This document shows positions 3,742-64,000 of a DNA stretch of 64,000 nucleotides, one piece after another. Each line of letters starts with the position of its first letter. Position 1 is the first letter of the stretch. This DNA is from Zygnema circumcarinatum SAG 698-1b (taxonomy: Eukaryota > Plantae > Zygnematophyceae): positions 1,364,001 to 1,428,000 of the forward strand of contig CM074817.1 in assembly GCA_037447605.1 (NCBI GenBank), given 5' to 3'. The notes under the pieces were generated by a model. It had not been told where the DNA came from and ran no database searches. It saw only the letters and a program-made list of their open reading frames with translations. The position numbers and the translations under genes are program-made.

Positions 3742-5469
3742 TGTTGCATAGTCACTGTGAAACTATCGTATCGACAAGTCACAACATGGACATGCTAATG
3801 TGTCAGGCGGCATGCAAACAGTATTGAGATAGTCCAAGACTGAGTCAAACGCGTTAGGCAAGCTTGTCGAGCTTGGCAATGTCGTCAAGTACAAGGGCGA
3901 CATCCTACTATACTTGCCATCACTCTACGAGTGGTCCAATATCGTGTCAGAAGAAGCACAAGTGGAGTTGTCACGCCCTGTTGGTGCCAGCAACGCCACT
4001 GTCAACTATACGACAGCAGTCAAGCCTTATCTGAGACTGCTAGAGAAGAACGCGCTTGTAGTGTTATCACTACCAGTCAATTTTTGTGTTGGCAGTGTCA
4101 GGTACAAAGTCACACTCGCAGATGACAAGCTGGTGTTCAAACAGGCAAACGTGTGTGACGACAGCCGCACACATGCTCAAGACCGGCCTCTCTTGAGTCG
4201 AACGCGTTAGGCAAGCTTGTCGAACTTGGCAATGTCGTCAAGTACAAGGGCGACATCCTGCTATACTTGCCATCACTCCACGAGTGGTCCAATATTATAT
4301 TAGAAGAGGCACAAGTGGAGTTGTCACGCGCTGTTGGTGCCAGCAACGTCACTGTCAACTACATGACAGCAGTCAGGCCTTATCTGAGATTGCTAGAGAA
4401 GAATGCGCTCGTGGTGTCGTCATTGCCAGCTAGTGTCTGTGTCGGCAGTGTAAAGTACAAAGTCACACTCGCAGATGAAAAGCTGGTGTTCGAACAAGCA
4501 GATGTGTGTAACGACAGCCGTACACACATGCTCAAGACCGGCCTCTTTAGGCTGACCATTGACAACGACCATTACCCCGTCAGCTGGCTGTTCAATGACG
4601 TCTGCTCGGTGTCTTTCTACCTGTCGAGATTGTTCGTGTACGACAAGGAGTACCAATGCCTCATGTGGTTAATAGGCAACGCGCTGTTGGACCCACAAGA
4701 CTCGACCTACTTCACGATGCTATACGGGTTTGGTGGCAATGGCAAGTCGACGCTCATGTCGTGTCTGAGGTTACTACTAGCAGGCTGTTGTAGACCTGCA
4801 GATGTTAGTGGCATCATGTCAAAGAGCATGTCCAGGGTCGAGACTAATATTGTGCAGATGCTGTCATCTATCAGGGTTGCCATGTGTGGTGATGTAGACT
4901 TGGGCGTTGGTAAAGTCAACAGCCACTACATCAAGGTCACTATTGGTGGTGATCTGACGTCAGTGCCACCATTCAGTGCCACCATCAGGGCCACGATACT
5001 CATTGGCACCAACACGCTACCGTCTTGGGATGCCAACATCAAGCTAAGATTGCCTGCCATACATCGACGTGTCAGGGTGATACATATGACAGTGGACGCC
5101 CTGTCACTCAAAGACGACAAGATGACGTCAGACAAGCGTGACCACATGTCTTGGATATACAGATGTGTCTATACACGAATATCATTGACACATCCACCAA
5201 TGTTAACACAATCGTTGTTGATGTCACTCTTGTATGATAAATATACCAAAGTTTTGGAGTACGTGACTATAGACGACAAGACAACGCTGGCTCAGTGTGT
5301 GACAGTGACGACGATGATATGTGCCATCAAAGGCATTAGTCATGACACTATCAATACGTCACTAAGATACTACGGATCAGAGCGCCGAGTCACAGTCAGT
5401 AGTATCAACTACATAGCAGGCATAAGACCCACCAACAGTGTAGTGTCAAAGGGGGTGTGAGTGTTGTGT
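3742..5469 (+). pseudogene. Virus/plasmid-type D5-like primase-helicase (SF3) gene fragment, 5'-truncated, with an internal 353-bp tandem duplication; longest ORF 4267-5460
   Basis: Walker A GFGGNGKST, Walker B-like VAMCGD, motif C LIGTN, Arg-finger-like AIHRRVRVI, and an upstream D5_N-like segment (VVKYKGDILLYLPSLHEW). No introns. The block at ~3842 is duplicated at ~4195. An in-frame TAG lies upstream. Confidence 0.75.
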
Positions 5470-9162: not shown

Positions 9163-9366
9163 GTGACCGTTGGATTTACCACGTGTACCATATTGCCAAG
9201 TTTTGACCGTTGGATTTTCGTTTACGAGAGAGTATGTGGACTGTTGGATGATCCACGTATGCATTCGCAGAGCCCCGACCGTTGAATTCCCAAGTGTCTC
9301 TTTGCAGAATTTGGACCGTTGGATTGCCTCGTCGCGCGAGAGAGCCGAGCTTTCAAACCGTTGGAT
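9163..9366. promoter_or_regulatory. Regularly spaced array of six GACCGTTGGAT-like motifs, some coupled to CCACGT, upstream of the 10.1-kb gene
   Basis: Copies near 9165, 9205, 9238, 9277, 9314 and 9355 (about 33-41 bp apart). The reverse complement matches the ACGTGG-N3-ATCCAACGG units at 51.3 and 59.6 kb. Confidence 0.5.
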
Positions 9367-31700: not shown

Positions 31701-34700
31701 GAGCCTTATCATTAGAGATTTCCAAAATTTCAGCTGTAAACCATCCGCCACAAAAGCCTGCCTCATTGGAACAGACCTGTGAAAATCAAACAACACCTAT
31801 TACTAGTGTAAGCATCCACCTATGATAAAGAAGTTTCCAGGCAAGAAGTCCGGAGCTTTGATTGTTAACTATGTACAATCATGCAGTCCTTATGTAATAT
31901 GAAGCCAAGGCTAAATGCATTTACACAGGGATGAAGCATTCGCACCAATGGAGCCATAAGAAGCCTCTCTGAAAAAGGTAACCAAGCTTCAGGACGCCAT
32001 ACTCAAAGAAAAATTACGAGAGTGCAGAAGGTACAGAAAAAAAATCCCATAGAACCTCCCAAAGTCCCTGCCATATAATGTTCTGGTCCTGTAGACTTTT
32101 TCTCTCAAAGATTTTGAAGAAGCCACAAATGCACCTTGTCTCCATAGTCCAAACTCACTCCTAAGGTGTAAGGCATTGACCCTTTTTTGCTTCTTCTGTT
32201 GTATGTACATATCGCATGTTTCTCTTCTAGCATTTCAAGGGTTACCGTATACAACGTTCTTCATTATCCAATCAGAGACGCTGCATGTGACATTGGACAC
32301 GTACAACCAGGTTGCTATCAAAACCGGACCTCCTTACCCTCCACAAGCACCCCTCCCCCTTTCCACCTTTTCCTCCACTGTTCTCACCTCGACAGCATCA
32401 CCAACCGCAAAAGACGCTCCTGCTGTATGAGCCACTTGTGCTTTGGGCGTACTGGCAGGTCGTGTTGCTGCCTTCATCTTCACGTCAAGTGAGTTCCTTT
32501 TATATACTGGCCGTTTGAAGGCCTCTATGTATGTCTGTGCTGCAGGCAATGCAAGAACCCAAGTTGCTCCTACCTGCAACTGCTCCGACGTGTGTTTAAT
32601 TCCCGGTTCACATGCATGAACCATCGACTTTCTAGACTCTCCACCTTGTCTAAATGACCTGATTTTCCCACGGCTGTCCTTCTGAAGCAATGCCAAGGCT
32701 CTATCTTTAGCTGCAAAAGCGACCCCTACAGCTGCATTTGCAGCAGCTTGACATGCCATTGCCACTTGAATAGCGGTAATGGCTTCTGCGGCTGCGGCCA
32801 CACCTGCTTCAACTCCTGCCATTTCGCACTTCCCTAGCTCGCCTCTCAAGTTTTCAATCTCCACATGAGCTTTAGATAAAGCAGCATACGAGGCAGCATT
32901 CCCTTTTTGGGCCTCTACTGCCGCTTCCCTGACAGCCTCTGCCCAGCTAGGGACGTTTTGGAATTCACCTTTTTGGGAAGAACCCTCAGTACCCTGATTT
33001 GCGGCTTTCTGAGCTACAGGATTAAAAGCCACTACTGAGCTTTCAGCAGCTTGCATAGCTGCCTGGGCTGCTCTAAGTGCAGCAGTAGGATTCCCAGTGT
33101 CCTTGGTTAAGAATTCTGTGGCGGCTGCTTTCGCTCTGACGCTATTAGGCGTGCTGATGAGCAGATTTCCCAACATGAGAGGATCTACAGATCTCAAGTC
33201 TTCAGCCGGAATGGAGGCAGAAGGGGAAGTCTGCACTCTAGAATTTCCGAACTTGGAGTTTCGGTTTCTTCGTCCGGGAGGCATGTCGTCAGAAAACGTG
33301 CACGAGTAAGGAAACGTGGAATGATGCTGACTTGTCTCAGCAGGCCCATTCTGTGACTTGCCCCCCCGTCTTCTTACCCTTCCATTCTCCTTCGGGACGT
33401 TAACACTGCCCCTACCCCTACCCCTGCCCCTGCCCCTGCCCCTGCCTCTGCCTGTACCCATATTCCTGCCCCTCCCACTTAATTTTCTACTGCCTGTATC
33501 AGACTCTGAGGGATCCATCGACTGTCCTATTCCTGCTGCGATATCAAAGGATAATTCTGTACGTCTCCCTCGATGATGAGAGTGAGAGCCTATCGCTTCA
33601 GAGATTGGAGATTCTGTTGACGAATGATGGGGGCCGAATTCACAAGTTGACAACGGATATGTAGGAGTTCCTCCATTAACTAAAGGAGAGGCCAAGCCTC
33701 CAGTTGGCCGAGGCAACTGATGAGGTATCGCTGAAACTGAAGATTGGAGTAGAAACATTGACTGCACCTGTGGTGAGAGTCTCTCTGGAGGCCATTGAGA
33801 ACACGAATCCGGAACAACTGTTGGAGCTTCTGGTGACAATGGGAGTTGATTAGCAGTTTCATTTGCCTCTTGTACAGCTTTCCAGGCAGCTTGCAACTGC
33901 GTCCAATGCTCAATGTCGACTGACGATAATCCTGCGCCCATAGCATTGCATGAGGACAGCATTACAATCTGCGGAAAAACGCTTGCTCTCAGAAGCTCTC
34001 TTTGACATGAGGCTGCAAGTGAAAATTGAAGTTGAAAAATCAGAAAAGCACGTAAGTATGAAGTGACACCTCAACAAAATTCTTAACTTGCCTTAAGAGG
34101 ATCTAAGGCATAGCTCAGATTGAAAACATTGGCAAACGTTTGGTGAACTTGACATGGCGGGCAATAAAGCCAGTTGAACAAGGAAAGACATGAAATGGCA
34201 TGAAATTAAACGAACCTTACTCAATATACCATTTCACACTAATCACATGCTTCAACGATCCAGAACCTCTCTTTGCTCTCGTCTGGGTTTGGTGAAGTAT
34301 AGTAACGAACCTTCCAATAATGATCCAGTTTACTTCATTTACCACTGAGGAAAGGTGAAAGATAAAAGCTTTCCTAAACACACATTGAAGCTTAAGTATG
34401 GTGCCCTTGTACATCATGATTTCCCAAAATATACCTTGAGGATAGCCGGCAAACGCGATAGCCTTCAATTCAGGTTCAAGAGGCTCCCTTCGACTGCCGG
34501 AGAAAAAAAACAGCAATGCTATGTATTTTTCAGATAACACGTTAAGATCTATTCCCTATCATACTGAGAGTTAACCAGGAAGGACTGTCTCAGAGTTATT
34601 TCAAGCCGTACGATAGCCAAGCAACCGGTGCTTTACCGACTTTATAGCATAGATTATGAATATGATATACGACCTGGAAGTTTGTTTAGCAATACAATGA

Positions 34701-36546: not shown

Positions 36547-38325
36547 TTCATTGAACTCGCGATGGCGAGGCCATCAAATTTACATGGATAAAGGCAAAAT
36601 GTGGAACCACGAAGGACTGGTCACAAAGGACCGAAACACAATAAAACGAATCTAGGAGCGGAAAACTACGCCTAGGCACAACAACGCAGCCCTAGAAGCA
36701 GCCGCGAAGGTCACCGATGTGAGGCACGTCGCGAGGAGGGAGCGGCGGAAGTCCACCAACACGGTCACCAACAACTGCAGCACGCCGAAGTAGCGTAGAA
36801 GCGAGGCAACGCTGAAGGGCCCGACGGAAACACGTTGTCGACAAAAGGGCAGCCAAGATTGCGAGCAGGGCTTCCGGGCCGCACTCGAACAGCGCGATGG
36901 GCGTTGCGAAGGAAGGATCCAAACGGGTGTCGAGGCACCCAAAAATCTCAGAGTGCGAAGGAACAGCTTGCGGGCCATCACGGTGAGCACATGCATGCCC
37001 GCCGAAAGGCCGCATCGCGAGCAGCCACGCCTTCACTTATGTGCCCTGGACGCTGAAATAAACGCTGACGCGATCGGCCAATACATCCTAAACACGCCGG
37101 GCACCATCCATAAGAGCCAAATCAGGGCGAACTCCGCCGCTGCCTTAATAGTCGGCCGCGGGGATATGTTCAGGTGGCTCGCCCGCCGCATTGCCGTAAG
37201 TTAGCTTCTTGAGCCACCGCAGCACCTGATCGCCAAGCACAACATTAAGGGAGCTGGGAAAATGCGCTCACTCGTGCACATCGAAGTAGATGAACGCCCT
37301 GTGCATCAATCGAATCATCACAAACACAACGGCAGGAACCCTGCAATGGCGATGGGGAGTCAGACGGTCATACCGCAGTCGGTAAACTGGCCTGGGGTCA
37401 AAACGGCGGTGGAAAATATCGGGTAACAGCCAACCGGGCCCCAGCCCTGCAGGACCCGCAAGCATTAAGAGCGGCCGAGCACGCTAACATCAGAAGGAAG
37501 AGCCGCAATAAGGGTAGAGAACTCAGCAGCACCAACCTCATCAGTCAAAGTGAGCTCGACACGTGCAACAGACTCGACGGCAAGCAAAACAAACGGGGGC
37601 GCACGAGCCTGAGCACTAGCAGGAAGCAAACCATGGGCGTCACGCAATGCAACCTGAAACGGAAGATCACCATCATCAACATGAGCGACAACAGACTGAA
37701 GCAACGGACGATCAGCCACAATAAAACGCGAAGCCAAAATAGGAGCAACGAGAGCCCAACTACCCAAAAACGCAGAAGGCGCCACACGAATTGTCGGGAT
37801 GAGTCCTAAACCGCCCGCCGAAATAGGGAGCGAGGCTTGCGTACGTGCAAGCGGACCCTCCGGTCGATCGAAAATACCAGGACCCAAAAGGCGATGACAT
37901 ACAGAAAACAAACGCTCATCGAAAGATCGCAATGACTCAAGGAAAGCAGGGTTAGGAGGGAGAGTTCGCAAAAGGTATGACGGACGCAAAGCAAAACAAC
38001 GAGTAAGCAAAGAAAAAGCCACCTGAGGATCTGAAAGATGTGGAAGCTCATCGACCTGAGACGTATCCTCAACCAAAGCATCATCAACAAAACGATCAAC
38101 ATAAGATGCAACGCCAAAAGGGCAGNNNNNNNNNNGGGACGCAATCGGTGCAGGGGCCTCTCGTAACTCGCGAAAAATCTCATGACGATCCACCGTATTA
38201 AAAGCGTTTGTCACATCAACCTGCAAAACAACCCAATCAGGGTGAAGATCCAACGTCGCACGAATGCCATGAACTACGGCCTCGCGGCCCCCAGGGGTCG
38301 CCACACCAAACTGGTAAGGGGAAAA
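36547..38325 (-). mobile_element. 5'-truncated, decayed CRE-clade non-LTR retrotransposon (RT, CCHC knuckle, RLE endonuclease)
   Basis: PYQFGVATPGGREAVVHGIRATLDLHPDWVVLQVDVTNAFNTVDR (RT domains). CVCDDSIDAQGVHLLRC zinc knuckle, RPDL..DG..V.DV and EIFGCL RLE-region motifs. Frameshifts and stops throughout, N-gap at 38126-38135. Confidence 0.85.
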
Positions 38326-38354
38326 ACGGTTGATAACGGATAACGGTTGATATA

Positions 38355-39262
38355 CAGGGTTCTTCAAATAGGGGATTTCGGCTTAAGATAGGGGACTGTC
38401 CCCTAACTTGGTTTTGTAAAAACACGTAAATATGGACTGTACGGACAAAATCGTGCACGTACGGACATTCATCATTTCCCAACACTGCTACCGTCGAGTC
38501 TGATTTTTCAGTAATTGGATGGGAAAAAGACGAGTTTTGAAAGAGATTGACAGACTTTTCATTGGAAGACGAGTTTCGAAAGAGGTTGACAGACTTTTCA
38601 TTGGAAGGCATTTTTCACTGCAAACAGTTTGATAGTTTGACCGCTCTTCGAGGGTCTCTTTGAGTAGTTTGCATCACTTCTATAGCTGTCTTGTTCAGCC
38701 TAAAACTCCTAAAGGAGTGAGACCATTTTTCATTTCATTTCATTTCTAATTTTAGTTCCTATTTCAGTTTTCCTTTTGTGACTACACCTAGAATTTCAGA
38801 GGTTATGATTTGGAATAGAGTTTTTGTGAGGAAATGTCAAGACTATGATGGATTTTAAAGTGATACTTGGAGTAATTAATGATGGATGGAAAAGGAAATA
38901 GAGAGCTTAGGATTGGATCTACAAAGTTTCCGTGCAACTAAGTTTTTGAATAAGTAACTATATGTTGTGATTGCCAAATGCACAGTTGTTCTAATTGATT
39001 GGTAAAATTTACCAATCTATAAGAGTCGAAGAGGTTGTACTAGTTTCTAAAGCCGTGTTATTATACCAACAAGTAAAGTTCATATACATCATTGCTATCG
39101 TGGTTGCAAATGCAATTCATTTCCTTTTTGTTTTTAACCAAAAAAATGCTTTTTTGGGGCTTGTGTGGTATTTAAGTTAAAATCACGTAAACTAATCTCA
39201 AAATCTTACATAAATAAGCTATTTACGATATTTAGGGGATCTCCCCTATTTGAAGAACCCTG
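38355..39262. mobile_element. hAT-type non-autonomous DNA transposon (MITE)
   Basis: 21-bp perfect TIRs CAGGGTTCTTCAAATAGGGGA / TCCCCTATTTGAAGAACCCTG. 8-bp TSD ttgatata / ctgatata (7/8). Internal ~41-bp tandem duplication at ~38525-38610. Confidence 0.85.
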
Positions 39263-44964: not shown

Positions 44965-47900
44965 ATGTCGTCCAAATTTTGGGGTCAGGTATGTGTTGGC
45001 TGAATATTTGAGAGGAAGCTTGATACTGCTCCACTACGATCGAGAATGCAATATGTCATTCGGAGAAGATGCAATCCCCTTGCATGTCTGAATTGTGTGA
45101 AGAAATGTTGTGTTGGAGTTACTGATTGGTGCGTAGCGTGCAAAGTCACTACGTCCTCCTGTATCTGGTTAATAATGAATTAAGTATGGCTGAGGCTGAA
45201 AATAGGCCCAGATATGGACGGCGCGGCCAAGGAAAGTTTGTTGAGTATTTGAAGGCTGTCTTTGCTAGTGCCAAAAAAGGGAATTTCAACCACAAATAGA
45301 CTGCTTTGCCCGACGACTGTGGACGTTATTTTTTGAGGTAACGAAGGTCATTGTCCTCTGCGCTTCTGGTATCTGCAGGGTGATAGTGACTCTGAGGAGG
45401 AAGAGGAGCCTCAAGAAGAGTCGGAGGAAGAGTCGGAAGAAGAGGAGGCGCCTAAGGCTCCGGCGGCGGCTGGTAACAAGTATATCGTGGGAGACAGTGA
45501 TGACGATTCTGAGGATGAAGGTCCAAGGAAGGTCGTCAGTGCAAAGGATAAACGGTATGCAGAAATGGGTCAGACAATTGAGCAGATGAAAAATCAGATG
45601 AAGATCAACGATTGGGTTTCTTTGCAGGTAAGCCTCGCAGGTCTAGACAAACGGGAGGTGGATGGGGTAGTGCACAGCATTTTCCTGTAGGTGTTTCAGA
45701 TAGTATTGCATCTTGCCGGTGTTTTTATTAGTATATTAAATATGCTCAGGAAGTGCAAAGCTGCAGTGGAAGACTCTGCACAGTTATGGAAGGAGGTCGT
45801 GCTTGCTTTCAATTTTATCAACCGAACTGGATAACTGAATCAAAACTGAATCACAGCTGTAGCAGCTTATATTCGGAAGTAACTGGGACATGCTTGAAGA
45901 ATTTTATAAAGTTTGACATGTGTCTTGCGTCTTTTGTCTCGATGAGGAAAAAAAGGCTTACATCGGCATTTGAGTGTTTGGTTTGATGAGCTGGATTCCG
46001 CAAGTCCAAGACGGCACTAACAGCTGGGCCACGGAGTTGTATCTTCGTGCAGGAAAGCTTTGAAAAGATGAACAAGCAACTGGAGAAGGTGATGAGAGCG
46101 AGTGAAGTTGATAGAGCTCCACGGGTGTACATCAAAGCGCTTGTAATGCTGGAAGACTATTTGACACAGTCTTTAGCTAACAAAGATGCGAAGAAAAAGA
46201 TGTCTCCAAGTAATGCTAAGGCCCTTAATTACATGAAGCAGAAGTTAAAGAAGAACAACAAGTTGTACGAGGCAGAGATTGCCGCTGCTCGTGAAAATCC
46301 AGTGTCTGACGAGGAGGACGAAGATGAGGATGAAGAGGAGGACGAGGATGAGGATGAGGAGGACGAAAGCGATTTGGAAGAGCCGGAGAAGATTGCAGGG
46401 CTAGATGATGAGGATGATGATGAAGAAGGTAAAGACTGGGAGGTACAGAAGAGCAGGAAGGATAAACTAATGGACAAGCAGTTTCAACGTCCCTCTAGCG
46501 AAATCTCGTGGGATATGGTGAACAACAAGCTTAAGGAGATCATTGCTCAGAGAGGAAGGAAGGGCACAGATAGGGCAGAACAGGTGGAACAGCTGCAGTA
46601 CTTGACAAAAGTGGCAAAGACTCCAGCGCAGAAGCTAGAGGTTATGGTCCATGTCGTTTCGGCACAGTTTGATATGAATCCTAGTCTGAACACGCACATG
46701 CCCATCCCTGTCTGGAAAAAGTGCGCCAGCAATCTGATGATAATTCTTGACATTCTTGTTGGAAACCCCAACATTACCATGGAGGAATCTGCTGAGCCAG
46801 AAGATGAGAACGAGACTGCTAAAGGAGCTGATTATGAAGGACAGATAAAGGTCTGGGGTAATCTGATTGCTTACTTAGAACGAATAGATGACGAGCTGTT
46901 CAAGAGCTTACAGGTACGCTCCTGGTCATATGTTTTCGTCAGTAAAACTATCATACTTTGACTTCTGATTGCTTCTCGAGATGACTCGTGCAGTTTATGA
47001 ATTTCTTATTACGTTTCAGTTACAACAGTAACAATGCCACACTCGAAGAAATTCACTCACTATCGTTTCTGCCGTGGTTACAAATATATACGCAGTGCAT
47101 AGATCCGCACACAAAGGAATACGTTGAGCGATTGCGAGATGAGCCCATCCTTTTGGCTCTTGCGCAAAATGTTCAGCGATACATTGAGCGCATTGGTGAT
47201 ACCCGTTCAGCTGCTAGAGTGGCCTTGAGGAGAGTTGAACACGTATACTACAAGCCACAGGTGCGCCGTTTTGACTTGTCGATGCACATGATCTTGTTTA
47301 GAAGAGTGTAAAAATCGTTTGCATGCTTATTTGCCACTTGAAGATGGTTTGCTCTTCTCAGGTATTATGCTGCAATTCTTTCTGGACCAAGTGCTAGTCG
47401 TAGTGTTTTTATTTATAGGACATTTTTTTGCAAGTGTTGAACCTTGCAAGCGGCAGAACGTGTGTTGTTCGTGCATTTCATTACATGGATCTGGTAAAGG
47501 ATGTTAGATGTTTTGTCCCCAGCGTAGGCACGAAGGAGACGTCGTCTGAAAAAAGGGTGGTTGTTGCAAATGTTATGGCGTGAAAGAAAACTCTTGTCCT
47601 CAATTGGAAATTGGGGGGCGGGGGGTGACAGCCGCATTTTGGATATCTGCTTTGATGTGTTTTTAGGTAGTCTTGCATTGGTGTGTTATTTAGAAGATCA
47701 GTTGCCGCCTGTTTGAAATGCTAAACTGATGAACATCTGCTGTGGGAGGAGGGAACAGCAAGTGTACGATGCTATGAGGTTGTTTGCGGAGCAGCAGTTA
47801 GAAGATGATGGCTTGGAGGCTGTCGTAGTCACCGGAGACGACGAGCTTGATGAAGATGGGACAGAAAAGAAAAAAGTGTCTGTGAGGCCGGAGGGGCCCC

Positions 47901-50716
47901 CAGCTTTTGTGGAGACAAAGCCTTTGGTGCCTCGTCGACCATCCTTCCCTGAAGACTGCCGTGTTCTTATGAACGAGCTTGTGGCAACAGTTTATAAGTT
48001 AGGAGATGAGCGGACCAAGGCGCGGGCCATGCTTTGTGACATCTACCATCATGCCATTCTTGATCACTTTCATGTCGCAAGGGACCTGCTTTTTATCAGT
48101 CATTTACAGGTCAGTCCTATTGTCCTTTTGCCTGTGGAAATACAGTTAGGAGAACCAGATATTGGCGGTGCTTCTCTAACTGACATAACAATTGCATTGT
48201 AAACTTAACTGGAAGGGTTTCCTTTCCTACTATTGGCCGTGCCTTACTTCAGTGCTAAGAGTCACTGCAATGCGAAGAGAAAGAATTGCTACGAGTCTGC
48301 TTTGCCTTAGTCTTCTGTTTCCGCTCATTTTGTAGGTTACGAAACGTTTTGGGGTAAACCTACATCTACAGTTCGCATGCTAATTTATCCCTTTACCTTT
48401 TTAAGGCACCTGAACAATCGTCCTCGAGACGCTGCTAGCCTCGGGACAGTCTGTTATTGACATTGAACTCCCTGTTGTTTTGGTGGGATGGCTTACAGGA
48501 TAGTGTGCAACACATGGATATTGCAACGCAGATTTTGTTTAATCGTGCAATGGCTCAGCTTGGACTCTGTGCTTTTAGAGCTTCACTCATCAATGAGGCA
48601 CATGGATGCCTGTCCGAGCTCTATGCTGGTGGGCGAGTCAAGGAGCTTCTTGCTCAGGGAGTTTCACAAAGTCGGTATCATGAGAAAAACCCGGAACAGG
48701 TGAGCTATCTTTCGTTTCAGAACACATTTTCATGTTTTCTGGAAGGCTGTCAAGTGATCAAACTTACTAGGTTTCTTTGTTTTTCTTAAAACTAATATGT
48801 CGATAGGATAGCTTTCTGCAAGAGATGTGTCATCACGGACATATCGCTGAACAATGTAGACGGACCCCGCACTTTGCCTAACAAAATTCTTAAGTACAAC
48901 TTCCGGGCATGGTCAAGCTGTGCTTAAAACGCATATTTGACGCCTAGCTTGGCTTTGAACTACAGGAGAAACTAGAGAGACGCCGGCAAATGCCCCTTCA
49001 TATGCATATCAATCTTGAACTTTTGGAAGCTGTCCATTTGATCACGGCCATGCTGTTAGAAGTGCCAAACATGGCCGCCCATGCACATGATGTTAAGCGG
49101 CGTGTCGTTTCAAAGACTTTCCGGCGGCTTGTGGACAACTACGATCGGCAGACATTCACAGGGCCACCGGGTGAGTCGAGTATCACTCTGAAGGAAGTGT
49201 ATTGAACTGTACAAGCAAAGTCTGTTGTAGGGCCTTGTGTGCTCCATGAACACTACTTTGGGAAGCAGGCAGGCATAGGATACAGGATTTGAGTTCATAT
49301 ATCTATATCCTACTTCACACTTGGAAACGGTTTGCTCGTCCACTTCCTTTTTATGTCAGTTACGTGTTTTCTTGGGTCGAATTGCATTTTTAGTACCTTT
49401 GTCATCGAGTATAAAGGGCAAACCTAGAAATGCATTATTTGTGTGTTTCTGCCCAGTAATCAGAGCCGTCATGCTCCCTCTCCCAGCCTCTTCCAGCCAG
49501 TGAAGTGAGGAGAGCAGGGGAGCTGATTTTTTTCATGGGTCCTGTGAGTGCAGAGAATGTACGTGACCATGTTATGGCGGCAACACGTTCATTGAGCAGT
49601 GGCAGTTGGGAAAAGGCGGCGGAGGTGATACACAGCTTGGACGTATGGAAACTCATTCCGGCAGATTCACGAGATCGAGTTTTGTCAATGACGACTGAAA
49701 AGATCCGGGAGGAAGCGCTTCGGACGTATCTGTTCGCCTATAGCCCTTTCTATTCATCACTCAGCCTCGAAATGCTTGTACAGGTACTGCTTGAAACTGT
49801 ACAACTGATATGCAGTTTACCCAGTAGATTGGCTCGGCATAAAGTGGCATGGATTAGGGAGGTGCCTTTCCACGTCGATGAAGAGACTTCTGCAACTGTT
49901 TTAGCACTGTACTTGAAAGCAGTGAGGATGAGATTCAAGACTCACACAATCCGCTATCTCCCTTTCTAACATATGTTAGCTTGTCTTACATGTTGTTTCG
50001 TTACTTTCTGAGGCTGGTGAACACTTAATGAACATTTTACGGGAGTTGTGGCCTTGTAGATGTTCGGGTTGACTGAGGCTCAAGTTCACAGCATTGTGAG
50101 CAAGATGATGATAGCGGAGGAGCTCCATGCCAGTTGGGACCAACCAACAAACAGCATTGTGATGCACAATGTTGAACCAACACGTCTGCAACACCTGGCA
50201 ATTCAGTATGCAGAGAAGCTCACGGTGCTGGTAGAGAGCAATGAGAGAGCCCTAGAGGCAAAGACTGGAGGCATAGGCCTTGAAGGCATGGACAGAAGAC
50301 GCGGGAAAGACAGAGGAGGAGATGGAGGAGACTATGCCGGAGCTGTGTCTGGAGGTCGCAGGGATCGCGATCGCGATGACAGAGGGAGAGGGGGAGGGTT
50401 TTCTGGAGGGAGGGGAGGGTCAAACTTTGGTGGAGGGCGTGGAAGGTCAGGCACAAGCTTTGGCAGAGACGGTGGGAGCTTCTTTGGAAATCAGAGGAGG
50501 GATGGTGGCGGAGGAGGCAGGAGCGGAGCGGTCAGCTATGGAGGCGGATTCCAGAGCTCGAGATATCAGGATGCATATGGAAGTGTTGGCAGGACGCCCT
50601 ATCAGAGTGGATCGGAGAGAGCGTCTGCGGGAGGGGGCGGTGGGAGGGCATCTGGTTCTGCAGCGGATGGGGGGAGCCGGATGGTTAGCTTAAATTACAG
50701 GAGTGGTCGGTACTAG
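44965..50716 (+). CDS. eIF3c: Eukaryotic translation initiation factor 3 subunit C
   Basis: [87 protein letters not shown] domain ([17 protein letters not shown]) and an RGG tail. GT-AG introns. Confidence 0.95.
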
Positions 50717-51304
50717 GAGCAGGGAGCTGTTGGCAGCTGTTGAAGGGATCGCCTCCTTTCCACTGGCAAGAGGGCTGCTTTACAAAAGGGGCCTGATTCT
50801 GTCAACGTGGAGGGATTGGCAATGAGCAGTAAGGCGTGCACTTTCTTTATATCTTTTACAGCCATCTCCATGTTTTTCTATCGTACTTTTGTCGTCTCCT
50901 TTTGAGAGGCAATCTCCTGCTTGTGCTTATGGAATAATGCAATCGAGAATGAGAAAAGCAGTCGTGTATGGTAGCATGCAAACGGAACTAGATGTGCAAA
51001 GCAAAGCCTAAAAGACATTTGATAGTGGATCTCAAGTTTCCACATCTTGTCTTTAGCGAGTCCTATTCCATCCAAAAGCAAAAGATGCATAGCGCTAAAC
51101 TGTACTGCAATGCAGAAATGAAAAAGGAAGGAAGAATGAAACAGGCCTCAGTAACAGTCCTGAAGAAGAGAGCAAAATGTAAAATAGTCGAACAGTAGAT
51201 GTTTTGACTCAATATTGATTCCTTGCGAGCTTGTGGCCAAATCCGAATGGCCGCGTACTTGCCGAATTCTACACCCGAGGCTCTCCAACGGTCGAAAACA
51301 GACG

Positions 51305-51910
51305 CGTGTCGACGTGGCAAATCCAACGGTTATGCACCTCCAGATCGTGCTCTTGTTTATCTAACGGTCAGTACCTGACTTATTCCACGTGGCATATCGA
51401 ACGGCCATTTTTCCCAAATGTGTGGGCACGTGACCGCCAGGTCAGACTCTATAGTACCAACGTGGCACATTTAACGGCTGTTACATCTCGTCAAGTGTCC
51501 ATCGAACGGTCTCAATGTGTCCACGTGACATATCCGACGGCCATCGTTTCCTGCATCTCGCGTCGTTTTCCAACGGTCGTCCGAAGCAAGGTAAACCTTC
51601 CCCCCGTCTTTCCTCGCCACGTGGACCTACGTGGCAGAAGGTTGGGTAGAACACGTGGCGACATCGACTGCTAGCGTGGCATATGTATGACATGGCACTA
51701 GACACGTGGCGGACGTTTTGCCCTTTTTGGGGCGTGCGTCTAATGGGCAAGCGCGCATTCCAGCGCCAATAATTACACGTTGCAACCTCCTCCTAGGGAA
51801 CGGGCGAGTGATGGAACCAATCACAACACGTCACGTGTACACATTAGCCAGCGTGACGTCGAGATAGACTAATAATAGAGCGCCACGTCTAAATACATGC
51901 CGACGTGGCG
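51305..51910. promoter_or_regulatory. Dense G-box/ABRE (ACGTG[G/A]C) cluster with coupled ATC[C/G]AACGG motifs upstream of SSADH
   Basis: About a dozen ACGTG-core motifs in ~600 bp. Four to five of them are followed at fixed spacing by AT(C/T)(C/G/T)(A/G)ACGG. Confidence 0.55.
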
Positions 51911-52187: not shown

Positions 52188-59143
<6,956 letters not shown>

Positions 59144-59599
59144 GGGCTGTCCAGAAAAAAGATAAACGTTTGCAACGGGCAGCCCCAGAAACGGGAGTCA
59201 ACAAAATTTTCTTGCTATGCGAAAACAAGCTGAAATGAGTGCTGTACATTAGTTCAAGTTTAGATTGCGGCTTACTTAAATAGTGAACTCTGTCACTTTG
59301 AATCGTCACATGCTGAAAGCTATTGAAATTGATGAGGCATGCCATGGTCCAAAGCTCTTGAACATAACGGACGGCTTCAGAGGAGCCTCATGCATGAGCG
59401 GTGTAAGGCCCCCCGCGGTTCTCTATATGATCAATAAATCGGTGATGATTGAGAAAACTGCCCAACTTATTTATGACCAAAAAGATAGAAGTTAAGTTCC
59501 CCGTCGGTACAGGCCATGGGCCATGCGCTCTCTGCCCCTGCACGCTGTGGTGAAGGAAAGGAAAAACATGATGACTAGATCAAAGAAGCACACACGCTT

Positions 59600-59722
59600 C
59601 AATCCAACGGCGATGACTCTCCCACTTGTCCACGTGGCATATCCAACGGTAACATTGCAAAAGCTGGTGCCTATCCAACGGTTGGAAATATCCCACGTGT
59701 CCACGTGGCACATCCAACGGCA
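59600..59722. promoter_or_regulatory. Four ATCCAACGG (MSA-like) motifs, two coupled to CCACGTGGC, upstream of dnaN
   Basis: ccacgtggcatatccaacgg (59630-59649) and ccacgtggcacatccaacgg (59701-59720), plus solo copies at ~59602 and ~59673. Confidence 0.5.
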
Positions 59723-60051
59723 ATCCGAGATCTCGCATTGCTTGAATCCCAAACACGGTGGAATCTGCACGTGTGAGTTGAACATGACTACGACGAGTTC
59801 AAAAGTTCAATTCCAAAATCCCGCCCTAAAATCCTATAATCTCATGTCCATTCGTTTTGAACAAAAAGAAATAATCTCTTGAAAACACGACGACGAATTT
59901 TCAAATGTTAGGAAAGGCTCGGACATGAAATGCAGCGGCGGTTGTCGACCCGTGCGGCTGCTGGAGAGGGAGAGGGAGAGAGAGGGAGAGGTGAGAGGAG
60001 AGGGAGAGGAAGAGGGAGAGGGAGAGGGAGAGGGAGAGGAGGGAGAGGGTT

Positions 60052-63000
60052 ATGGCCGCAGCGCCTGCAGTCCTGGCGCCATGGCGGATATCGCACACGC
60101 GGTGCCGCATATGCTATGCACAGACAGAAGGTCAGGACGGAAATTGTTGCCAATTGGCGTTTGCTTCTCTAGAAATTCCTGACAATCATCCACTAATAAT
60201 ATAATCCTACTCCTTGTGATGCAGGTTTTGCAGGATTGTTAAATAATCAAAACATTGGGGCCACTGACAACATACCGCCTCTCAAGATAACCTTAAAGGC
60301 GGGAGATTTCCGCGCGGCAGTTGGCCGAGTGCTGCCCGCCATCAGCAAAAAGTCACTTTCAAACTCACTTTTTGAACATGGCATGTGTTTTTCCCCAACT
60401 TGATATGGAAGGGTTGTGTTGGGTGTGAACATGGCATGAAAATAACTTTCGACATTCATAGTAGCCATGTCCAGTGGTCTATTCTTTGTTTATTCGGTAC
60501 TGAATTCGAACGAAAGAGAACCGTTCCAGATTTTCTTCTACTACTGGGATTGACGTTTTTATGTGAAGGCTTTGTTGCGGTTATTTTGTCGTCTTTAGCT
60601 TATGTCAATAACTCGGAATGCAAAGAGGCCTATCTGATTATTTCTCTGGAAGCAGTTGACGATTATCTGATTTATGAAGTAATGGAAGGAATGAAGAGTA
60701 TTGTGATAAATGCAAACTTGGTCATTGATTTAGCAATGTCGTTAACTTTTGTCTACATTGAATATTTTCTATTTCGATGCATATAAGATTGATTTATGCT
60801 GTCTGACTATCAAAGGCAAAACGAGAGATAAAATTGATTGTTTGTTGGCTAATATACTAACTAGCGTTCATTAAGCAAAGTGGTGAGTTCCTTGTTTGGG
60901 TGTTGACAGTTCTTTTGGAGGTTGAGCCTAACAACGATTCTGAAGGACATGCTACGGTGATGGCAACCGACGGAATGCTCGCTTTGAAGTGTCCAGTTCA
61001 AGTAGAAGGAGTGATTTCAGGAGGTATGGCAGCAGTGCCTGGAAAACTGTTGTTTGACCTCCTGGGCCAAGAAGGTGCTACGACTTCACTGCAGGTGCTT
61101 AGCTCCACTTTTTGCCCTCCTGCATCCCTCCCTCAGTTGCTGGTCCATTTGGGGAAGGCATTATTGAAACCCGAAGCTGTTTCATGGAGAGGAGCACATG
61201 CTTTTGACTACTGGGCAGTGAAGTGGAACAGTATCATGTGGCCACTGTTTCATATGCCAGTCGAAGGTTAGGGTTTTAGTTTCTCATAATGAAGGTTCAA
61301 GAGTTAAGGGCATTTAAAGTCCGGTCTAGACGAGCTCAGCAGACCTTCCTTGTTCGTGCCAAGGATTATGGACTTTCACTTTTCATGTTGTACGTAATCG
61401 GTCAGAGCAAGCAGATGAATGATGCAGTGTGTGGTAAGAGACGATATAAGTACACCATAGTTTTGTCTGCTTGAGAGACTCACACGAGCTTCTGTTGGTG
61501 ATGGCGTGATGCATAGATCAGCGCCAATAAGGGCGGCGCAGGGCTGACTCTCAAAAACGGCCGGTCGGCCACAATTGGTCTTCGAGGAGAGAACGCAGAG
61601 GACTTTCCAGCAATGCCCAAAGTGAAGCCTGCTGTAAAAGTGAGCTCAGTCTCTTTCTTCTACTTAGAACCCTAATGGCCCTCTTTAGAGCCGTGAAACC
61701 CACCTGTGAGAGCAGCCATAGGGTAAACAACATGCAATGCAATGATGACCAACTCTGAATCTCATTAACTGCTCGATTTCTTCAAATTTCGATCAAAATT
61801 TCTTCAGCAAAAAGGCTGCGCTCCTTTATTTCATAAAAAAATTGATATGAATTACACACTGGCTGCGTGACTATTTCCTACAGATGGTTGTACAACGCGG
61901 TGTCCTGCGAGATGCCCTTTTGAGAACACGAATTGCAGCTGCACGGGAGGACGAGAGCCGACAAAACCTCAGCAGTGTGGTGCTCGGACTGTCTGCAGGG
62001 CAAGCTGTGCTCTTAGCCACGGATGGAAGACTGTTCGCTCGTCTCACATTTGCTCCCAAGGCAAGGCACATGTGCATCCCTGCCATGGCATGGCATGGCA
62101 TGGGGGGGGAGACCCGCATCCCCACATCCGCTACCATGAGCTGATTTTGTGAGTTCTCTCTCGTGAACAGCACGGAGACCAATTGGCTGAAGCTGAAGCT
62201 GAGGCTGAAGCTGGGAGCGTGGTGGTCAAGGAAGACTATGTTCTGCGTTGCTGGGAAAGCATTTATCTGAAAGGAGGACCTTACCAGGGTCAAGGGCTAC
62301 GCTGATTTGTGTGACAAGTTTGAGAATCATGTTGGTTTCTATGTTGAATGGAAGGTCCATGGTTGATTGGTGGGGGCAGGTTGATCCAAACTTCGTTGGC
62401 ACCTTCATTTTGCCATTACGTGCGGTGGATGAAATTTGTCGTGCATTTGGGGGAGTTCCGAAAGCAGCTTCCAAAAGGGCGCAAGAGGCTGCAAGGCAGC
62501 TGGATGAACAGGAGGTGACGGTTGAACTTCAGCGAGAGAGAGTTGCAATTCATCTCCTTGACGGGTGGGAATAGTGACCCTTCAAAATTGGATCCAATTG
62601 GGGAACAGAGTTTTGTCAGTCGGCACTGTTGAAAAAAGGTCCTGTCTATTGTGGTTTGGACCAGTAAGTGAATGATTAACTTTGCGGGTAATTCGAGGTA
62701 ATCTGAAAGGCTGACTCAGTTACTGCTCTTTGTTGACTGTTCTTTGCTCTGCTTCGTTCAACGGTGTTGTGTCAGACAGTACAACCTTGGGAAGCCAATT
62801 GTTGATTGGCGACTATCCCGACCTTTCCCCCTTGATGAATAGAGAGCCCAAGGTGAGAATGGGTGGAGGACCACATGTATAGCTATCCTCCTTGAAGCTA
62901 CGTCGCACAAATTAGCTTTTTTTTTGTACTTCATGTTTTCACCTTTTAATTGTGTCATGGCCTTATCTAAACGTCATCCAACACGCGCTTGAGAACCGAG

Positions 63001-63740
63001 TGCAGGTGACCTTGAGTTTAGACCGACAAGAGCTTATTTCACATTTACGCAAAGTGGCACTCTTTTGTGGGAAATCGAGTGACAAAAGCGCTAAGGGCGT
63101 GCATATGGCTCTTCGTTCGAGTGTGCTTTCATTGAGTGTCTCCAGCTCTCATGCAGGCGAATACCAGGTAAGCCTTCACCACTTATTAAATATAGCATTG
63201 AATTTGAACCCCGAGACTCTGAGAGTTTCTGTTCCTCATTTCCACTAGCACCTTGAGCAAACGATCACTAATCTTCCTATATCGGGTAACATCTTTACAG
63301 CAACTGAAAAAGATTCAATGGGAAAGATTGTCTTGTAGAGTTTCAAGTTCATACAACGTACTTTCTTAATCGGATGTGCAGGCATTCATGGAGGTCGAAT
63401 ATGATGGAGCGCCAATGGATATTGGCTTCAATCCCCTTCTATTGGCGGACATCCTGCAGCATGTAGATGGAGGTAAGGAAACCTCGCTAACTAAAGACTA
63501 CCTTGTAGTGGAGTATAGTCAAGTCAAGTTTATTCTAAATCACGTCACTGACGCGGTTCACTGGTGCCTGAGAGCATTTTTTTTAAGAGTATTTTTTAAT
63601 TGGGACCTAACGCAGTCTCGTCTGAAACAGACATAGTCAGTTTGGGCCTTACAAGGCATGGAGGGAGCGGCACAGCTATCATTCGCGATGATGTGGCTAC
63701 TTTTATTCTTGGGGGGCTCGTGGATCCGGCGGATCCCTGA
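60052..63740 (+). CDS. dnaN: Nuclear, intron-containing bacterial-type DNA polymerase III beta sliding clamp with a putative organellar transit peptide
   Basis: Exons 60052-60130, 60225-60380, 60910-61094, 61517-61639, 61884-62060, (optional ~62170-62226), 62380-62564, 62780-62852, 63006-63167, 63382-63472, 63616-63740 join without stops. All three clamp domains are visible: LKITLKAGDFRAAVGRVLPAISKK...HVLLEVE...ATDG...AVPGKLLFDLL; NAEDFPAMP; RQNLSSVVL...LLATDGRL; ILPLRAVDEI; SQLLIGDYPD; LDRQELISHLRKV; VEYDGAPMDIGFNP. Confidence 0.85.
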
Positions 63741-64000
63741 GTGCAAGTAAGGAGGAAGGTAATTAGGAAGGTGCTCTTAGGGTACGACCATGGGTTGACT
63801 TTTGTGGGACTGAGGGGCTTTGAGGGTCTCAATCGTTGTATTTGACTTTAAGCCTGAAACTTCACGTTCTGCTCTCTTATGTGATGGTTCGATGTATGAC
63901 GTCGCCCCACATTGACCTGCAATAAACGCAGTTCTATGCCTTCTCCGTCCTACTTTGGTGTTAGAACCATCGGGAATAATTCCTTTCTCTGCAATTTTGC

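What the first reader, a model, noticed from the sequence alone, without database searches (positions are those of the whole stretch)
60052..63740. Intact, intron-rich bacterial beta sliding clamp (dnaN) in a streptophyte nuclear genome
Seen: 10-11 spliceosomal exons join in frame into a full three-domain DnaN fold. It is preceded by a ~45-aa leader (MAAAPAVLAPWRISHTRCRICYAQ...) that is Ala/Arg-rich and acid-poor. Established: eukaryotic nuclei use PCNA, plant organelles replicate with POP/Pol I-like enzymes for which no beta clamp is known in angiosperms, and plants do keep nuclear DnaX-like (STICHEL-family) clamp-loader homologues. Inference: this lineage may import a bacterial clamp into plastids or mitochondria, which would be an unrecognised clamp/loader system for organellar replication or repair. 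The many introns argue against bacterial contamination and for an old EGT or HGT.
Basis: partly seen in the sequence, partly recalled or inferred. Interest (0 to 1): 0.82.

Follow-up and report, generated by a model that had tools for sequence, protein, structure and literature searches.

The report
Bacterial sliding clamp gene in alga
A green alga related to land plants carries a real, spliced, expressed nuclear gene for a very divergent bacterial-type DNA sliding clamp with an organelle-style leader, which is the replication part that a 2026 preprint reported missing from plants and green and red algae.

Summary
Spliced contigs from four studies define a 10-exon gene on the + strand (60052-63740). 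It has nine introns, two of them GC-AG, and a 446-aa product.

Single exons give only sub-threshold Pfam hits. The whole protein scores 169 bits against a profile of 13 bacterial DnaN. It is 61% identical, without gaps over 409 residues, to one other eukaryotic transcript product (P0002). P0002 passes all three Pfam DnaN gathering scores, and its predicted structure matches solved beta clamps (TM 0.83/0.91). dN/dS is about 0.08.

Both proteins have unrelated N-terminal extensions that bacterial clamps lack. Both replace the conserved C-terminal M-P-M-R-L pocket strand with F[IL]L[GA]GLVD.

The origin is unresolved. Trees place the pair on a very long stem outside cyanobacteria, but an AU test does not reject a cyanobacterial origin (p 0.32).

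A May 2026 preprint reports Pol III alpha and tau/gamma in archaeplastid nuclei, including the zygnematophyte Closterium. It states that beta is confined to cryptophytes and Paulinella; its cut-off (PF00712, E<=1e-20) would miss this clamp.

The scan had noted this same stretch before (s1-390321).

Targeting, ring formation and partners were not tested.

The parts
60052..63740 (+). Whole coding region of the DnaN-like gene, from ATG to TGA. It has 10 exons and a 446-aa product.
   Evidence: Splice joints in contigs of four studies. In-frame assembly. 61% identity with no gaps to P0002.
60052..60130 (+). Exon 1, holding the start codon and the first 26 codons of the leader (MAAAPAVLAPWRISHTRCRICYAQTE).
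   Evidence: Joint 60130/60225 with GT..AG ends in all four runs. There is no in-frame ATG upstream; the frame opens at 59995.
60225..60380 (+). Exon 2, holding the end of the leader (to about 60280) and the start of clamp domain I (KITLKAGDF... from 60284). Its donor is GC.
   Evidence: Joint 60380/60910 in four runs. Donor ATG|gcatgt. The junction SLFEH|VLLEVE aligns to P0002 PLLEH|ILLEVE.
60910..61094 (+). Exon 3, domain I.
61517..61639 (+). Exon 4, covering the end of domain I and the linker with the conserved (A)EDFP motif.
61884..62060 (+). Exon 5, the start of domain II with the TDGR motif (bacterial TDGHRLA). Its donor is GC (AAG|gcaagg).
   Evidence: Joint 62060/62380 in four runs. 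Pfam PF02767 hit at E 0.15 on the exon alone. This exon found P0002 among 1.84 billion representative proteins.
62061..62148 (+). Stretch kept when the alternative GT donor at 62149 is used. It carries an in-frame TGA at 62142-62144, so that isoform is truncated.
   Evidence: Second joint 62148/62380 in four runs. The frame is open only to 62141.
62380..62564 (+). Exon 6, domain II. It includes an insert of about 16-21 aa (62449-62511, GVPKAASKRAQEAARQLDEQE) that bacterial clamps lack.
   Evidence: Alignment with E. coli, cyanobacterial and other clamps. An extra helix of lower confidence appears in the model of the orthologue.
62780..62852 (+). Exon 7, covering the end of domain II, the conserved YPD motif (Pro = E. 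coli P242) and the start of domain III.
63006..63167 (+). Exon 8, domain III.
63382..63472 (+). Exon 9, domain III, with the conserved IGFNP..L.D.L motif.
   Evidence: Pfam PF02768 hit at E 0.032 on this stretch alone..
63631..63740 (+). Exon 10, the last strands of domain III and the stop codon. The C-terminal strand TFILGGLVD (63699-63725) stands where bacteria have ..V(M)P(M)R(L).
   Evidence: This strand is predicted in the model of the orthologue, residues 396-404.
59603..59720 (+). Cluster of four TCCAACGG motifs and two CACGTGGCA G-box-like motifs, 330-450 nt upstream of the ATG. It is either a possible promoter module or a small dispersed repeat.
   Evidence: 12 TCCAACGG in the window against 1.24 expected, in three clusters. 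The composite motif occurs 6 times against 0.01 expected.
59960..60050 (+). (GAGAGG)n purine repeat running up to the start codon.
   Evidence: Read in the sequence. The reads tool skipped 59952-60052 as repeat, so the transcript start was not seen.

Best explanation
This is a functional nuclear gene of a streptophyte alga. It encodes a highly divergent homologue of the bacterial DNA polymerase III beta sliding clamp (DnaN) behind an N-terminal organelle presequence.

The most likely working is as follows. The precursor is imported, probably into the plastid, and the leader is cut off. The three-domain protein then forms a head-to-tail dimeric ring around organelle DNA. That ring tethers the nuclear-encoded, cyanobacterial-type Pol III alpha that the same algal group keeps. 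It would be loaded by a DnaX (tau/gamma, STICHEL-like) protein.

Shown here: the gene structure, transcription and splicing, the clamp fold of the orthologue, purifying selection, and the presence of a non-bacterial N-terminal extension.

Inferred: import and its compartment, dimeric ring formation, loading, and the partner. The peptide-binding cleft is partly rebuilt, because its C-terminal strand is changed, so the docking motif it accepts may differ from the bacterial one.
For: - Transcription and splicing. Nine introns are removed in contigs of four studies. Exon depths are several times the intron depths.
- Intact frame. The CDS is 1341 nt and encodes 446 aa.
- Family membership. The protein scores 168.7 bits against an HMM of 13 bacterial DnaN over nearly the full length.
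- Orthologue P0002 (a 521-aa transcript product from another set of runs). It passes the Pfam gathering scores for PF00712, PF02767 and PF02768. It matches TIGR00663 at 123 bits. It matches 53 solved clamps, down to E 8e-20.
- Structure. The AlphaFold model of P0002:115-521 has pLDDT 80.9 and pTM 0.81. It superposes on Pseudomonas and E. coli clamps at TM 0.83/0.91 and rmsd 2.4 A.
- Selection. The two algal proteins are 61% identical over 409 residues with no gap. dN is 0.28-0.30 against a saturated dS of about 3.4.
- Cleft and DNA-facing residues that are kept. R24 is K. R152, L155 (L/I), T172, G174 and P242 are kept. V247 and V360 are both L. The hydrophobic dimer-interface pair I272/L273 is L/F.
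- Leaders. Window residues 1-45 have no acidic residue before E26 and are rich in Ala and Arg. The 120-aa leader of P0002 begins Ser/Thr-rich with no acidic residue before residue 32. The two leaders are unrelated in sequence, as transit peptides usually are.
- Context from the preprint 10.64898/2026.05.23.727376. Plastid-targeted Pol III alpha and tau/gamma occur in archaeplastid nuclei, with Closterium sp. NIES-68 named.
- Unchecked scan notes. These report a 24-exon Pol III alpha gene, a conserved clamp-binding motif and STICHEL/DnaX-like genes in this same genome.
Against: - No localisation prediction or experiment was available.
- The window leader is short and could equally be mitochondrial.
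- The C-terminal residues that close the bacterial peptide-binding cleft (E. coli M362-P363-M364-R365-L366) are replaced. H175 is R and L177 is F/C. Canonical QL[SD]LF docking is therefore not assured.
- Some dimer-interface charged residues are not kept (E304 is A/V).
- P0002 falls below the NCBIfam equivalog cut-off, 123 against 137.65 bits.
- The clamp does not group with cyanobacteria in my trees, unlike alpha and tau/gamma in the preprint. Co-inheritance with them is therefore not shown.
- I could not check alpha or dnaX in this genome myself.
Confidence: 0.6

Rival explanations
1. The clamp is organellar but rewired. It no longer serves Pol III alpha. Instead it acts as a platform for other organelle DNA enzymes, such as POP polymerases, MutS/MSH1-type repair proteins, ligase or recombination factors. 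Its rebuilt cleft would recognise a lineage-specific motif.
For: The C-terminal cleft strand is replaced by a sequence conserved between the two algae (F[IL]L[GA]GLVD). H175 and L177 are changed, and there is a helical insert in domain II. The stem leading to the algal pair is very long, at 3.2-4 substitutions per site, which suggests an episode of changed constraint.
Against: Most other cleft residues are kept. The same algal group keeps alpha and tau/gamma (preprint). An unchecked scan note reports a conserved clamp-binding motif in this genome.
Confidence: 0.2
2. The clamp is a later horizontal acquisition from a non-cyanobacterial bacterium, near Nitrospirota, Planctomycetota or another Gracilicutes group. 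It is not an endosymbiotic inheritance from the plastid ancestor. This rival concerns origin and is compatible with either function above.
For: - The maximum-likelihood trees place the algal pair outside a well-supported cyanobacterial clade: 100/99 with 41 rows and 99/98 with 26 rows.
- In the larger tree the pair sits next to a Nitrospirales MAG (83/82).
- The best database hits are not cyanobacterial.
- The cyanobacterial HMM gives the lowest score (77-85 bits, against 112-155 for the others).
Against: - The AU test does not reject algae plus cyanobacteria (delta lnL 4.5, p 0.32).
- The stem is so long that its placement is unreliable.
- Early cyanobacteria (Gloeobacter, Gloeomargarita), the cryptophyte and Paulinella clamps, and many phyla were not sampled.
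- Some rows had been picked for their likeness to the algal protein.
- HMM scores depend on how diverse each training set is.
Confidence: 0.35
3. The gene is a decaying relic, a processed copy or bacterial contamination with no present function.
For: The sequence is highly divergent. Single exons fall below Pfam thresholds. Only one other member of the family was found.
Against: - The frame is intact across 10 exons.
- Splicing is seen in four studies.
- The gene is embedded among eukaryotic genes.
- The alignment to a distant orthologue has no gaps, and dN/dS is about 0.08.
Confidence: 0.03

Closest known systems
Bacterial DNA polymerase III beta sliding clamp (DnaN; E. coli 1MMI/2POL, P. aeruginosa 6PTH/6AMS, T. 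maritima 1VPK)
   Same: - It has three DnaN domains in the same order, and the model of the orthologue superposes at TM 0.83/0.91.
- The conserved motifs TDG, EDFP, YPD and IGFN are present.
- Cleft residues T172, G174, P242, R152 and L155 are kept.
   Different: - Identity to bacterial clamps is only 19-28%.
- It falls below the TIGR00663 equivalog cut-off.
- The C-terminal M-P-M-R-L is replaced, H175 is R, and there is one residue fewer after TDGR.
- There are inserts in all three domains, the largest being a helix in domain II.
- It is encoded in a nucleus, with nine spliceosomal introns and an N-terminal leader.
Nuclear-encoded, plastid-targeted Pol III beta of Pyrenomonadales cryptophytes (Teleaulax and relatives), preprint 10.64898/2026.05.23.727376
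   Same: It is a bacterial clamp encoded in a eukaryotic nucleus with an N-terminal targeting extension, in a lineage that also keeps Pol III alpha and tau/gamma.
   Different: The cryptophyte clamps are conserved enough to pass PF00712 at E<=1e-20, and they nest inside cyanobacteria near Gloeomargaritales. The orthologue of this one reaches only E 2.2e-8 on PF00712 and does not group with cyanobacteria in my trees. I had no cryptophyte sequence to compare directly.
Nuclear Pol III alpha and tau/gamma genes of Archaeplastida (for example Closterium sp. NIES-68), same preprint
   Same: They belong to the same proposed machinery and, per the scan notes, the same kind of host (a streptophyte alga). 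They are also intron-bearing nuclear genes with plastid-type leaders.
   Different: They are different subunits. The preprint states that no archaeplastid has the beta subunit.
PCNA, the eukaryotic nuclear sliding clamp
   Same: It has the same ring architecture of six repeated domains and the same job of tethering polymerases.
   Different: PCNA is a trimer of two-domain subunits (established knowledge). This protein has three domains and matches only the bacterial family: all Pfam and PDB hits are DnaN.
Plasmid-borne dnaN-dnaX pairs of Nostocales cyanobacteria (for example pCC7120beta)
   Same: They are extra, divergent clamp genes outside the main chromosome.
   Different: They cluster firmly with chromosomal cyanobacterial DnaN (100/99) and not with the algal pair. 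They are bacterial genes without introns.

Membership tests
DnaN / DNA polymerase III beta sliding clamp (Pfam PF00712 + PF02767 + PF02768) | All three domains are present in order and score above the Pfam gathering scores. | tested here: met
   Orthologue P0002 scores 34.7, 37.5 and 49.5 bits against cut-offs of 24.4, 27 and 27. The window protein could not be handed to Pfam as one piece. It is 61% identical to P0002 without gaps and scores 168.7 bits on my own DnaN HMM. Its single exons are sub-threshold.
DnaN / DNA polymerase III beta sliding clamp | The protein is an equivalog of bacterial DnaN by NCBIfam TIGR00663 (cut-off 137.65 bits). | tested here: not met
   P0002 scores 123.3 bits, E 1.1e-35, covering profile positions 2-341 of 367. 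It is a clear homologue but falls below the curated equivalog score.
DnaN / DNA polymerase III beta sliding clamp | The fold is three topologically identical beta-alpha-beta domains forming half a ring. | tested here: met
   The AlphaFold model of P0002:115-521 has pLDDT 80.9 and pTM 0.81. All top Foldseek matches are beta clamps, with TM 0.79-0.83 (query) and 0.86-0.92 (target) and E down to 1.9e-29.
DnaN / DNA polymerase III beta sliding clamp | A hydrophobic peptide-binding cleft lies between domains II and III, closed by the conserved C-terminal strand (E. coli V360, M362, P363, M364, R365, L366). | tested here: inconclusive
   T172, G174, P242, R152 and L155 are kept, and V247 and V360 are both L. 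However, M362-P363-M364-R365-L366 is replaced by GLVD plus a variable tail, H175 is R and L177 is F/C. The strand itself is still predicted.
DnaN / DNA polymerase III beta sliding clamp | The protein forms a head-to-tail homodimeric ring that encircles DNA. | not testable with these tools
   Only single chains can be folded here. The hydrophobic interface pair I272/L273 is L/F, but E304 is A/V.
Nuclear-encoded organelle-targeted Pol III subunits of photosynthetic eukaryotes (preprint 10.64898/2026.05.23.727376) | The gene is a eukaryotic nuclear gene and it is expressed. | tested here: met
   There are nine spliceosomal introns. Spliced contigs occur in four studies. The neighbouring genes are eukaryotic.
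Nuclear-encoded organelle-targeted Pol III subunits of photosynthetic eukaryotes | [quoted passage not shown] | tested here: inconclusive
   Extensions of 45 aa (window) and about 120 aa (P0002) precede the clamp. Their starts are acid-poor, and P0002's is Ser/Thr-rich. No predictor or experiment was available, so the compartment is not established.
Nuclear-encoded organelle-targeted Pol III subunits of photosynthetic eukaryotes | The gene is of cyanobacterial ancestry. | tested here: inconclusive
   The trees place it outside cyanobacteria. The AU test does not reject a cyanobacterial position, p 0.32.
Nuclear-encoded organelle-targeted Pol III subunits of photosynthetic eukaryotes | It co-occurs with Pol III alpha and a DnaX-type loader in the same genome. 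| not tested
   Only unchecked scan notes say so (s1-350927, s1-350986, s1-404128). I had access to this window alone.

The most novel reading that the evidence does not exclude
Zygnematophyte-type streptophyte algae may run a complete bacterial-style replisome core (Pol III alpha, a beta clamp and a DnaX loader) in their plastids. The clamp would not be the cyanobacterial original. It would be a replacement acquired from another bacterial lineage and then remodelled at its partner-binding cleft. That would make the organelle replisome a chimera of endosymbiotic and horizontally acquired parts.
Probability: 0.2. Interest if true: 0.8.

Novelty: new variant of a known kind. Interest (0 to 1): 0.68.

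Why it matters
The standard view is that plastids and mitochondria of plants and algae replicate with POP (Pol I-like) enzymes and lost Pol III. A May 2026 preprint revised this by finding alpha and tau/gamma in red and streptophyte algae. It concluded that no archaeplastid keeps the clamp, which left a replicase without its processivity ring.

This gene supplies a candidate for the missing ring in that kind of alga, according to unchecked scan notes on this genome. It also shows why the clamp was missed: it is too divergent for the cut-off used.

That makes a concrete question testable. Does a streptophyte plastid use a clamp-dependent bacterial replisome, when did land plants lose it, and was the clamp inherited or replaced? 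It also offers a natural variant of the clamp's partner-binding cleft for structural study.

Tried and rejected
- Single-exon Pfam and PDB searches gave only sub-threshold hits or none. They are useless by themselves for so divergent a protein.
- The spliced protein has no reference, so it could not be given to Pfam, the fold predictor or the big searches. I worked through the orthologue P0002 and through scripts instead.
- The other hit of the exon-5 search, P0001, is a 2242-aa repeat protein matched in 15 short stretches. I rejected it as spurious.
- A word search with the C-terminal half of P0002, meant to catch fragmentary transcripts, found nothing. It did not find this alga's own fragments either. 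Absence from that database is therefore weak evidence.
- Two metagenome scans found no relative.
- The genome scan with the P0002+P0003 motifs returned only two MAGs.
- P0005 and P0007, both 389 aa, were checked as possible cyanobacterial clamps. Their dnaA-dnaN-recF-gyrB context says otherwise.
- Long cyanobacterial-type clamps with N-terminal extensions (P0079, P0110, P0114, P0130) were looked at as possible eukaryotic clamps. The extensions look like mis-called starts.
- An attempt to name the organism through an exact protein look-up failed, as did paper searches for the run numbers.
- A mitochondrial (alphaproteobacterial) origin was tested and is disfavoured but not rejected (delta lnL 10.7, p 0.07).
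Full report
**1. What is in the sequence**

I read 59500-64000 and translated it in three frames.

The gene model does not rest on my reading alone. Contigs of four public runs from four studies, laid on 59600-64000, carry nine joints that skip exactly the proposed introns. Seven joints have GT..AG ends. Two have GC..AG ends once the small ambiguity of the joint is resolved: 60381-60909 (ATG|gcatgt) and 62061-62379 (AAG|gcaagg).

The resulting exons are 60052-60130, 60225-60380, 60910-61094, 61517-61639, 61884-62060, 62380-62564, 62780-62852, 63006-63167, 63382-63472 and 63631-63740. They join into 1341 nt, or 446 codons, with no internal stop.

Exon bins are several times deeper than intron bins in every run, and unspliced contigs exist at low depth. 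The runs carry no firm RNA label, but nine precise intron removals in four studies show processed transcripts.

A second joint from 62148 to 62380 (GT..AG) is present in all four runs. It keeps 62061-62148, which contains an in-frame TGA at 62142, so it gives a truncated isoform.

The rest of the window holds eukaryotic genes: eIF3c N-terminal and PCI domains, an F-box plus WD40 gene, and an aldehyde dehydrogenase. Bacterial contamination is therefore excluded.

**2. Is it a beta clamp?**

Exon by exon the signal is weak:
- PF02767 reaches E 0.15 on exon 5.
- PF02768 reaches E 0.032 on exon 9.
- Exon 3 finds nothing in the PDB.

Because the spliced protein has no reference, I searched 1.84 billion representative proteins with exon 5 alone. 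One real hit came back: P0002, 521 aa, 67% identical over the exon. A repeat protein, P0001, was spurious.

P0002 is encoded on about 2-kb transcript contigs of six runs, SRR8128902-08. The window protein aligns to it at 61% identity over 409 residues without a single gap, across every exon junction. This independently validates the model, including both GC-AG introns.

P0002 gives the following results:
- It passes the Pfam gathering scores of all three DnaN domains (34.7, 37.5 and 49.5 bits).
- It matches TIGR00663 at 123 bits, below the equivalog cut-off of 137.65.
- It matches 53 distinct solved clamps, the best being T. maritima 1VPK at E 8e-20.

The window protein itself scores 168.7 bits on an HMM I built from 13 bacterial DnaN, over profile positions 2-342 of 366.

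An AlphaFold model of P0002:115-521 has pLDDT 80.9 and pTM 0.81. It superposes on Pseudomonas, E. coli, Bacillus and other clamps at TM about 0.8/0.9 and rmsd 2.4-3.3 A. The language-model search also returns only DnaN clusters.

**3. Is it maintained?**

Between the two algal coding sequences dN is 0.28-0.30. dS is saturated at about 3.4, which gives a ratio near 0.08. The saturated dS makes the ratio rough. Together with the gap-free alignment, though, it shows purifying selection over a long time.

**4. What is conserved and what is changed** (E. coli numbering, with the roles of residues taken from established knowledge of the E. coli clamp)

Kept:
- R24 as K.
- R152, L155 (L/I), T172, G174 and P242.
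- V247 and V360, both as L.
- The hydrophobic dimer-interface pair I272/L273 as L/F.

Changed:
- H175 is R. Some bacterial clamps, such as P0003, share this (TDGRRL).
- The algal proteins have one residue fewer after TDGR.
- L177 is F or C.
- The C-terminal strand is replaced. In bacteria it ends in M362-P363-M364-R365-L366 and closes the partner-binding cleft. In the algae it reads F[IL]L[GA]GLVD followed by a variable tail. That motif is identical in both algae, so it is under constraint, and the strand is still predicted in the model (residues 396-404).

There are also inserts. One is a helix of about 16-21 residues in domain II (62449-62511), which has lower confidence in the model. Smaller ones lie in domains I and III.

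So the ring scaffold looks intact, while the docking site is partly rebuilt.

**5. The leaders**

The clamp domain begins at residue 47 of the window protein and at about residue 121 of P0002. The 45-residue window leader is rich in Ala and Arg, with its first acidic residue at position 26. The leader of P0002 starts Ser/Thr-rich, with its first acidic residue at position 32. The two leaders share no sequence.

This is what organelle presequences look like, but I had no predictor. The compartment is therefore inferred, not shown. The transcript start is hidden by a (GAGAGG)n repeat that the reads tool skipped. There is no in-frame ATG upstream of 60052.

**6. Distribution**

A word search of 5.8 billion proteins with P0002 found only P0002 itself plus bacterial clamps at 23-28% identity. 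So no full-length relative of this family turned up there among annotated plant or algal proteins.

A search with the C-terminal half, meant for fragments, found nothing. It also missed this alga's own fragments, so that database is a poor witness for fragmentary transcripts.

Two scans of JGI metagenome contigs found nothing. The second used motifs conserved between the two algal proteins.

So far the family has two members.

**7. Origin**

I gathered the following rows:
- Chromosomal cyanobacterial clamps, reached through a search seeded with the Nostoc plasmid dnaN.
- Clamps of other phyla from mislabelled chromosomes and plasmids in PLSDB.
- E. coli.
- The best database hits.
- Two MAGs found by motif scan, one Planctomycetia and one Nitrospirales.

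In a 41-row tree (LG+C20 PMSF) the two algal proteins form one clade (100/100) on a stem of 3.2 substitutions per site. They fall outside a strongly supported cyanobacterial clade, which includes the Nostocales plasmid clamps (100/99). They sit next to the Nitrospirales MAG with unstarred support of 83/82.

I then dropped all rows that had been picked for likeness to the algal protein. This 26-row tree gives the same exclusion from cyanobacteria (99/98), with the stem at about 4 substitutions per site.

HMMs built per group score the algal proteins lowest for cyanobacteria: 77-85 bits, against 112-128 for proteobacteria and other Terrabacteria. This measure depends on how diverse each training set is.

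The AU test does not reject algae plus cyanobacteria (delta lnL 4.5, p 0.32). It only marginally disfavours an alphaproteobacterial sister (delta lnL 10.7, p 0.07).

My conclusion is that there is no positive evidence for a cyanobacterial origin and some against it, but the branch is too long and the sampling too thin to decide. Early cyanobacteria and the cryptophyte and Paulinella clamps were not available to me.

**8. What is known**

Paper searches for DnaN or a sliding clamp in plastids, streptophytes or green algae found no report of such a gene in Archaeplastida.

The closest work is the preprint by Antoine et al. (bioRxiv 10.64898/2026.05.23.727376, May 2026). Its relevant points are:
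- Plastid-targeted Pol III alpha and tau/gamma are encoded in nuclear genomes of red algae and of green algae outside Chlorophyta, and they group with cyanobacteria. Closterium sp. NIES-68 is named.
- No archaeplastid has all four subunits.
- The beta screen was PF00712 at E<=1e-20 on 17 streptophyte genomes.

The orthologue of the present clamp reaches only E 2.2e-8 on that model. It would have been missed.

Unchecked notes of this scan say that this genome is a streptophyte alga close to land plants. They also say that it holds a 24-exon Pol III alpha gene, a conserved clamp-binding motif and STICHEL/DnaX-like genes. I treat these as leads.

**9. Verdict**

The steps that would make it a mechanism remain untested, namely import, ring formation, loading and partner.

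The most likely working is a plastid sliding clamp for the retained Pol III alpha. I put this at about 0.6, of which near-certainty attaches only to 'real, expressed, selected beta-clamp homologue'. A clamp rewired to other partners is the main functional rival. A non-cyanobacterial origin is a live possibility.

Relative to the literature I could search, the clamp in an archaeplastid is new. It is a divergent variant of a known family, within a system that was itself described only months ago.

Noticed in passing
window 9167-9365 (-), 51284-51576 (+), 59603-59720 (+): The composite motif CACGTGGCA[Y/A]ATCCAACGG (a G-box core plus an MSA-like TCCAACGG) occurs in three clusters. One lies 330-450 nt upstream of the clamp gene's ATG. 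TCCAACGG occurs 12 times against 1.24 expected, and the composite 6 times against 0.01 expected. Contigs show loose ends and a 47-nt skip there, so it may be a dispersed repeat or a shared promoter module. An unchecked scan note reports an MSA cluster at the STICHEL-like gene of the same genome.
   Followed up: partly
window 62061-62148: An alternative GT donor at 62149, seen in all four runs, competes with the productive GC donor at 62061. It adds a stretch with an in-frame stop at 62142. This could be unproductive splicing used for regulation.
   Followed up: partly
window 63660 and beyond 64000: Contigs of runs X2 and X7 have 216-255-nt loose ends before 63660. One contig of X2 runs about 800 nt beyond the window's end. 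There may be a long 3' UTR, an alternative upstream exon of another transcript, or an overlapping downstream gene.
   Followed up: no
window 59960-60050: A (GAGAGG)n purine repeat of about 90 nt abuts the start codon. It masks the transcript start in the reads tool.
   Followed up: no
L008 (Nostoc sp. PCC 7120 plasmid pCC7120beta, 1444-3954): Nostocales plasmids carry their own divergent dnaN (about 440-480 aa with a low-complexity tail) directly followed by dnaX. This forms a large family (P0015-P0064) that branches as sister to chromosomal cyanobacterial clamps in my trees.
   Followed up: partly
window 13565-16366, 46047-50716, 57286-58101: Other genes of the window are an F-box plus WD40 repeat gene, eIF3 subunit c (N-terminal and PCI domains) and an aldehyde dehydrogenase exon. 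ORFs of 397, 542 and 300 aa at 4267-5460, 32334-33962 (-) and 37465-38367 (-) have no Pfam match.
   Followed up: no
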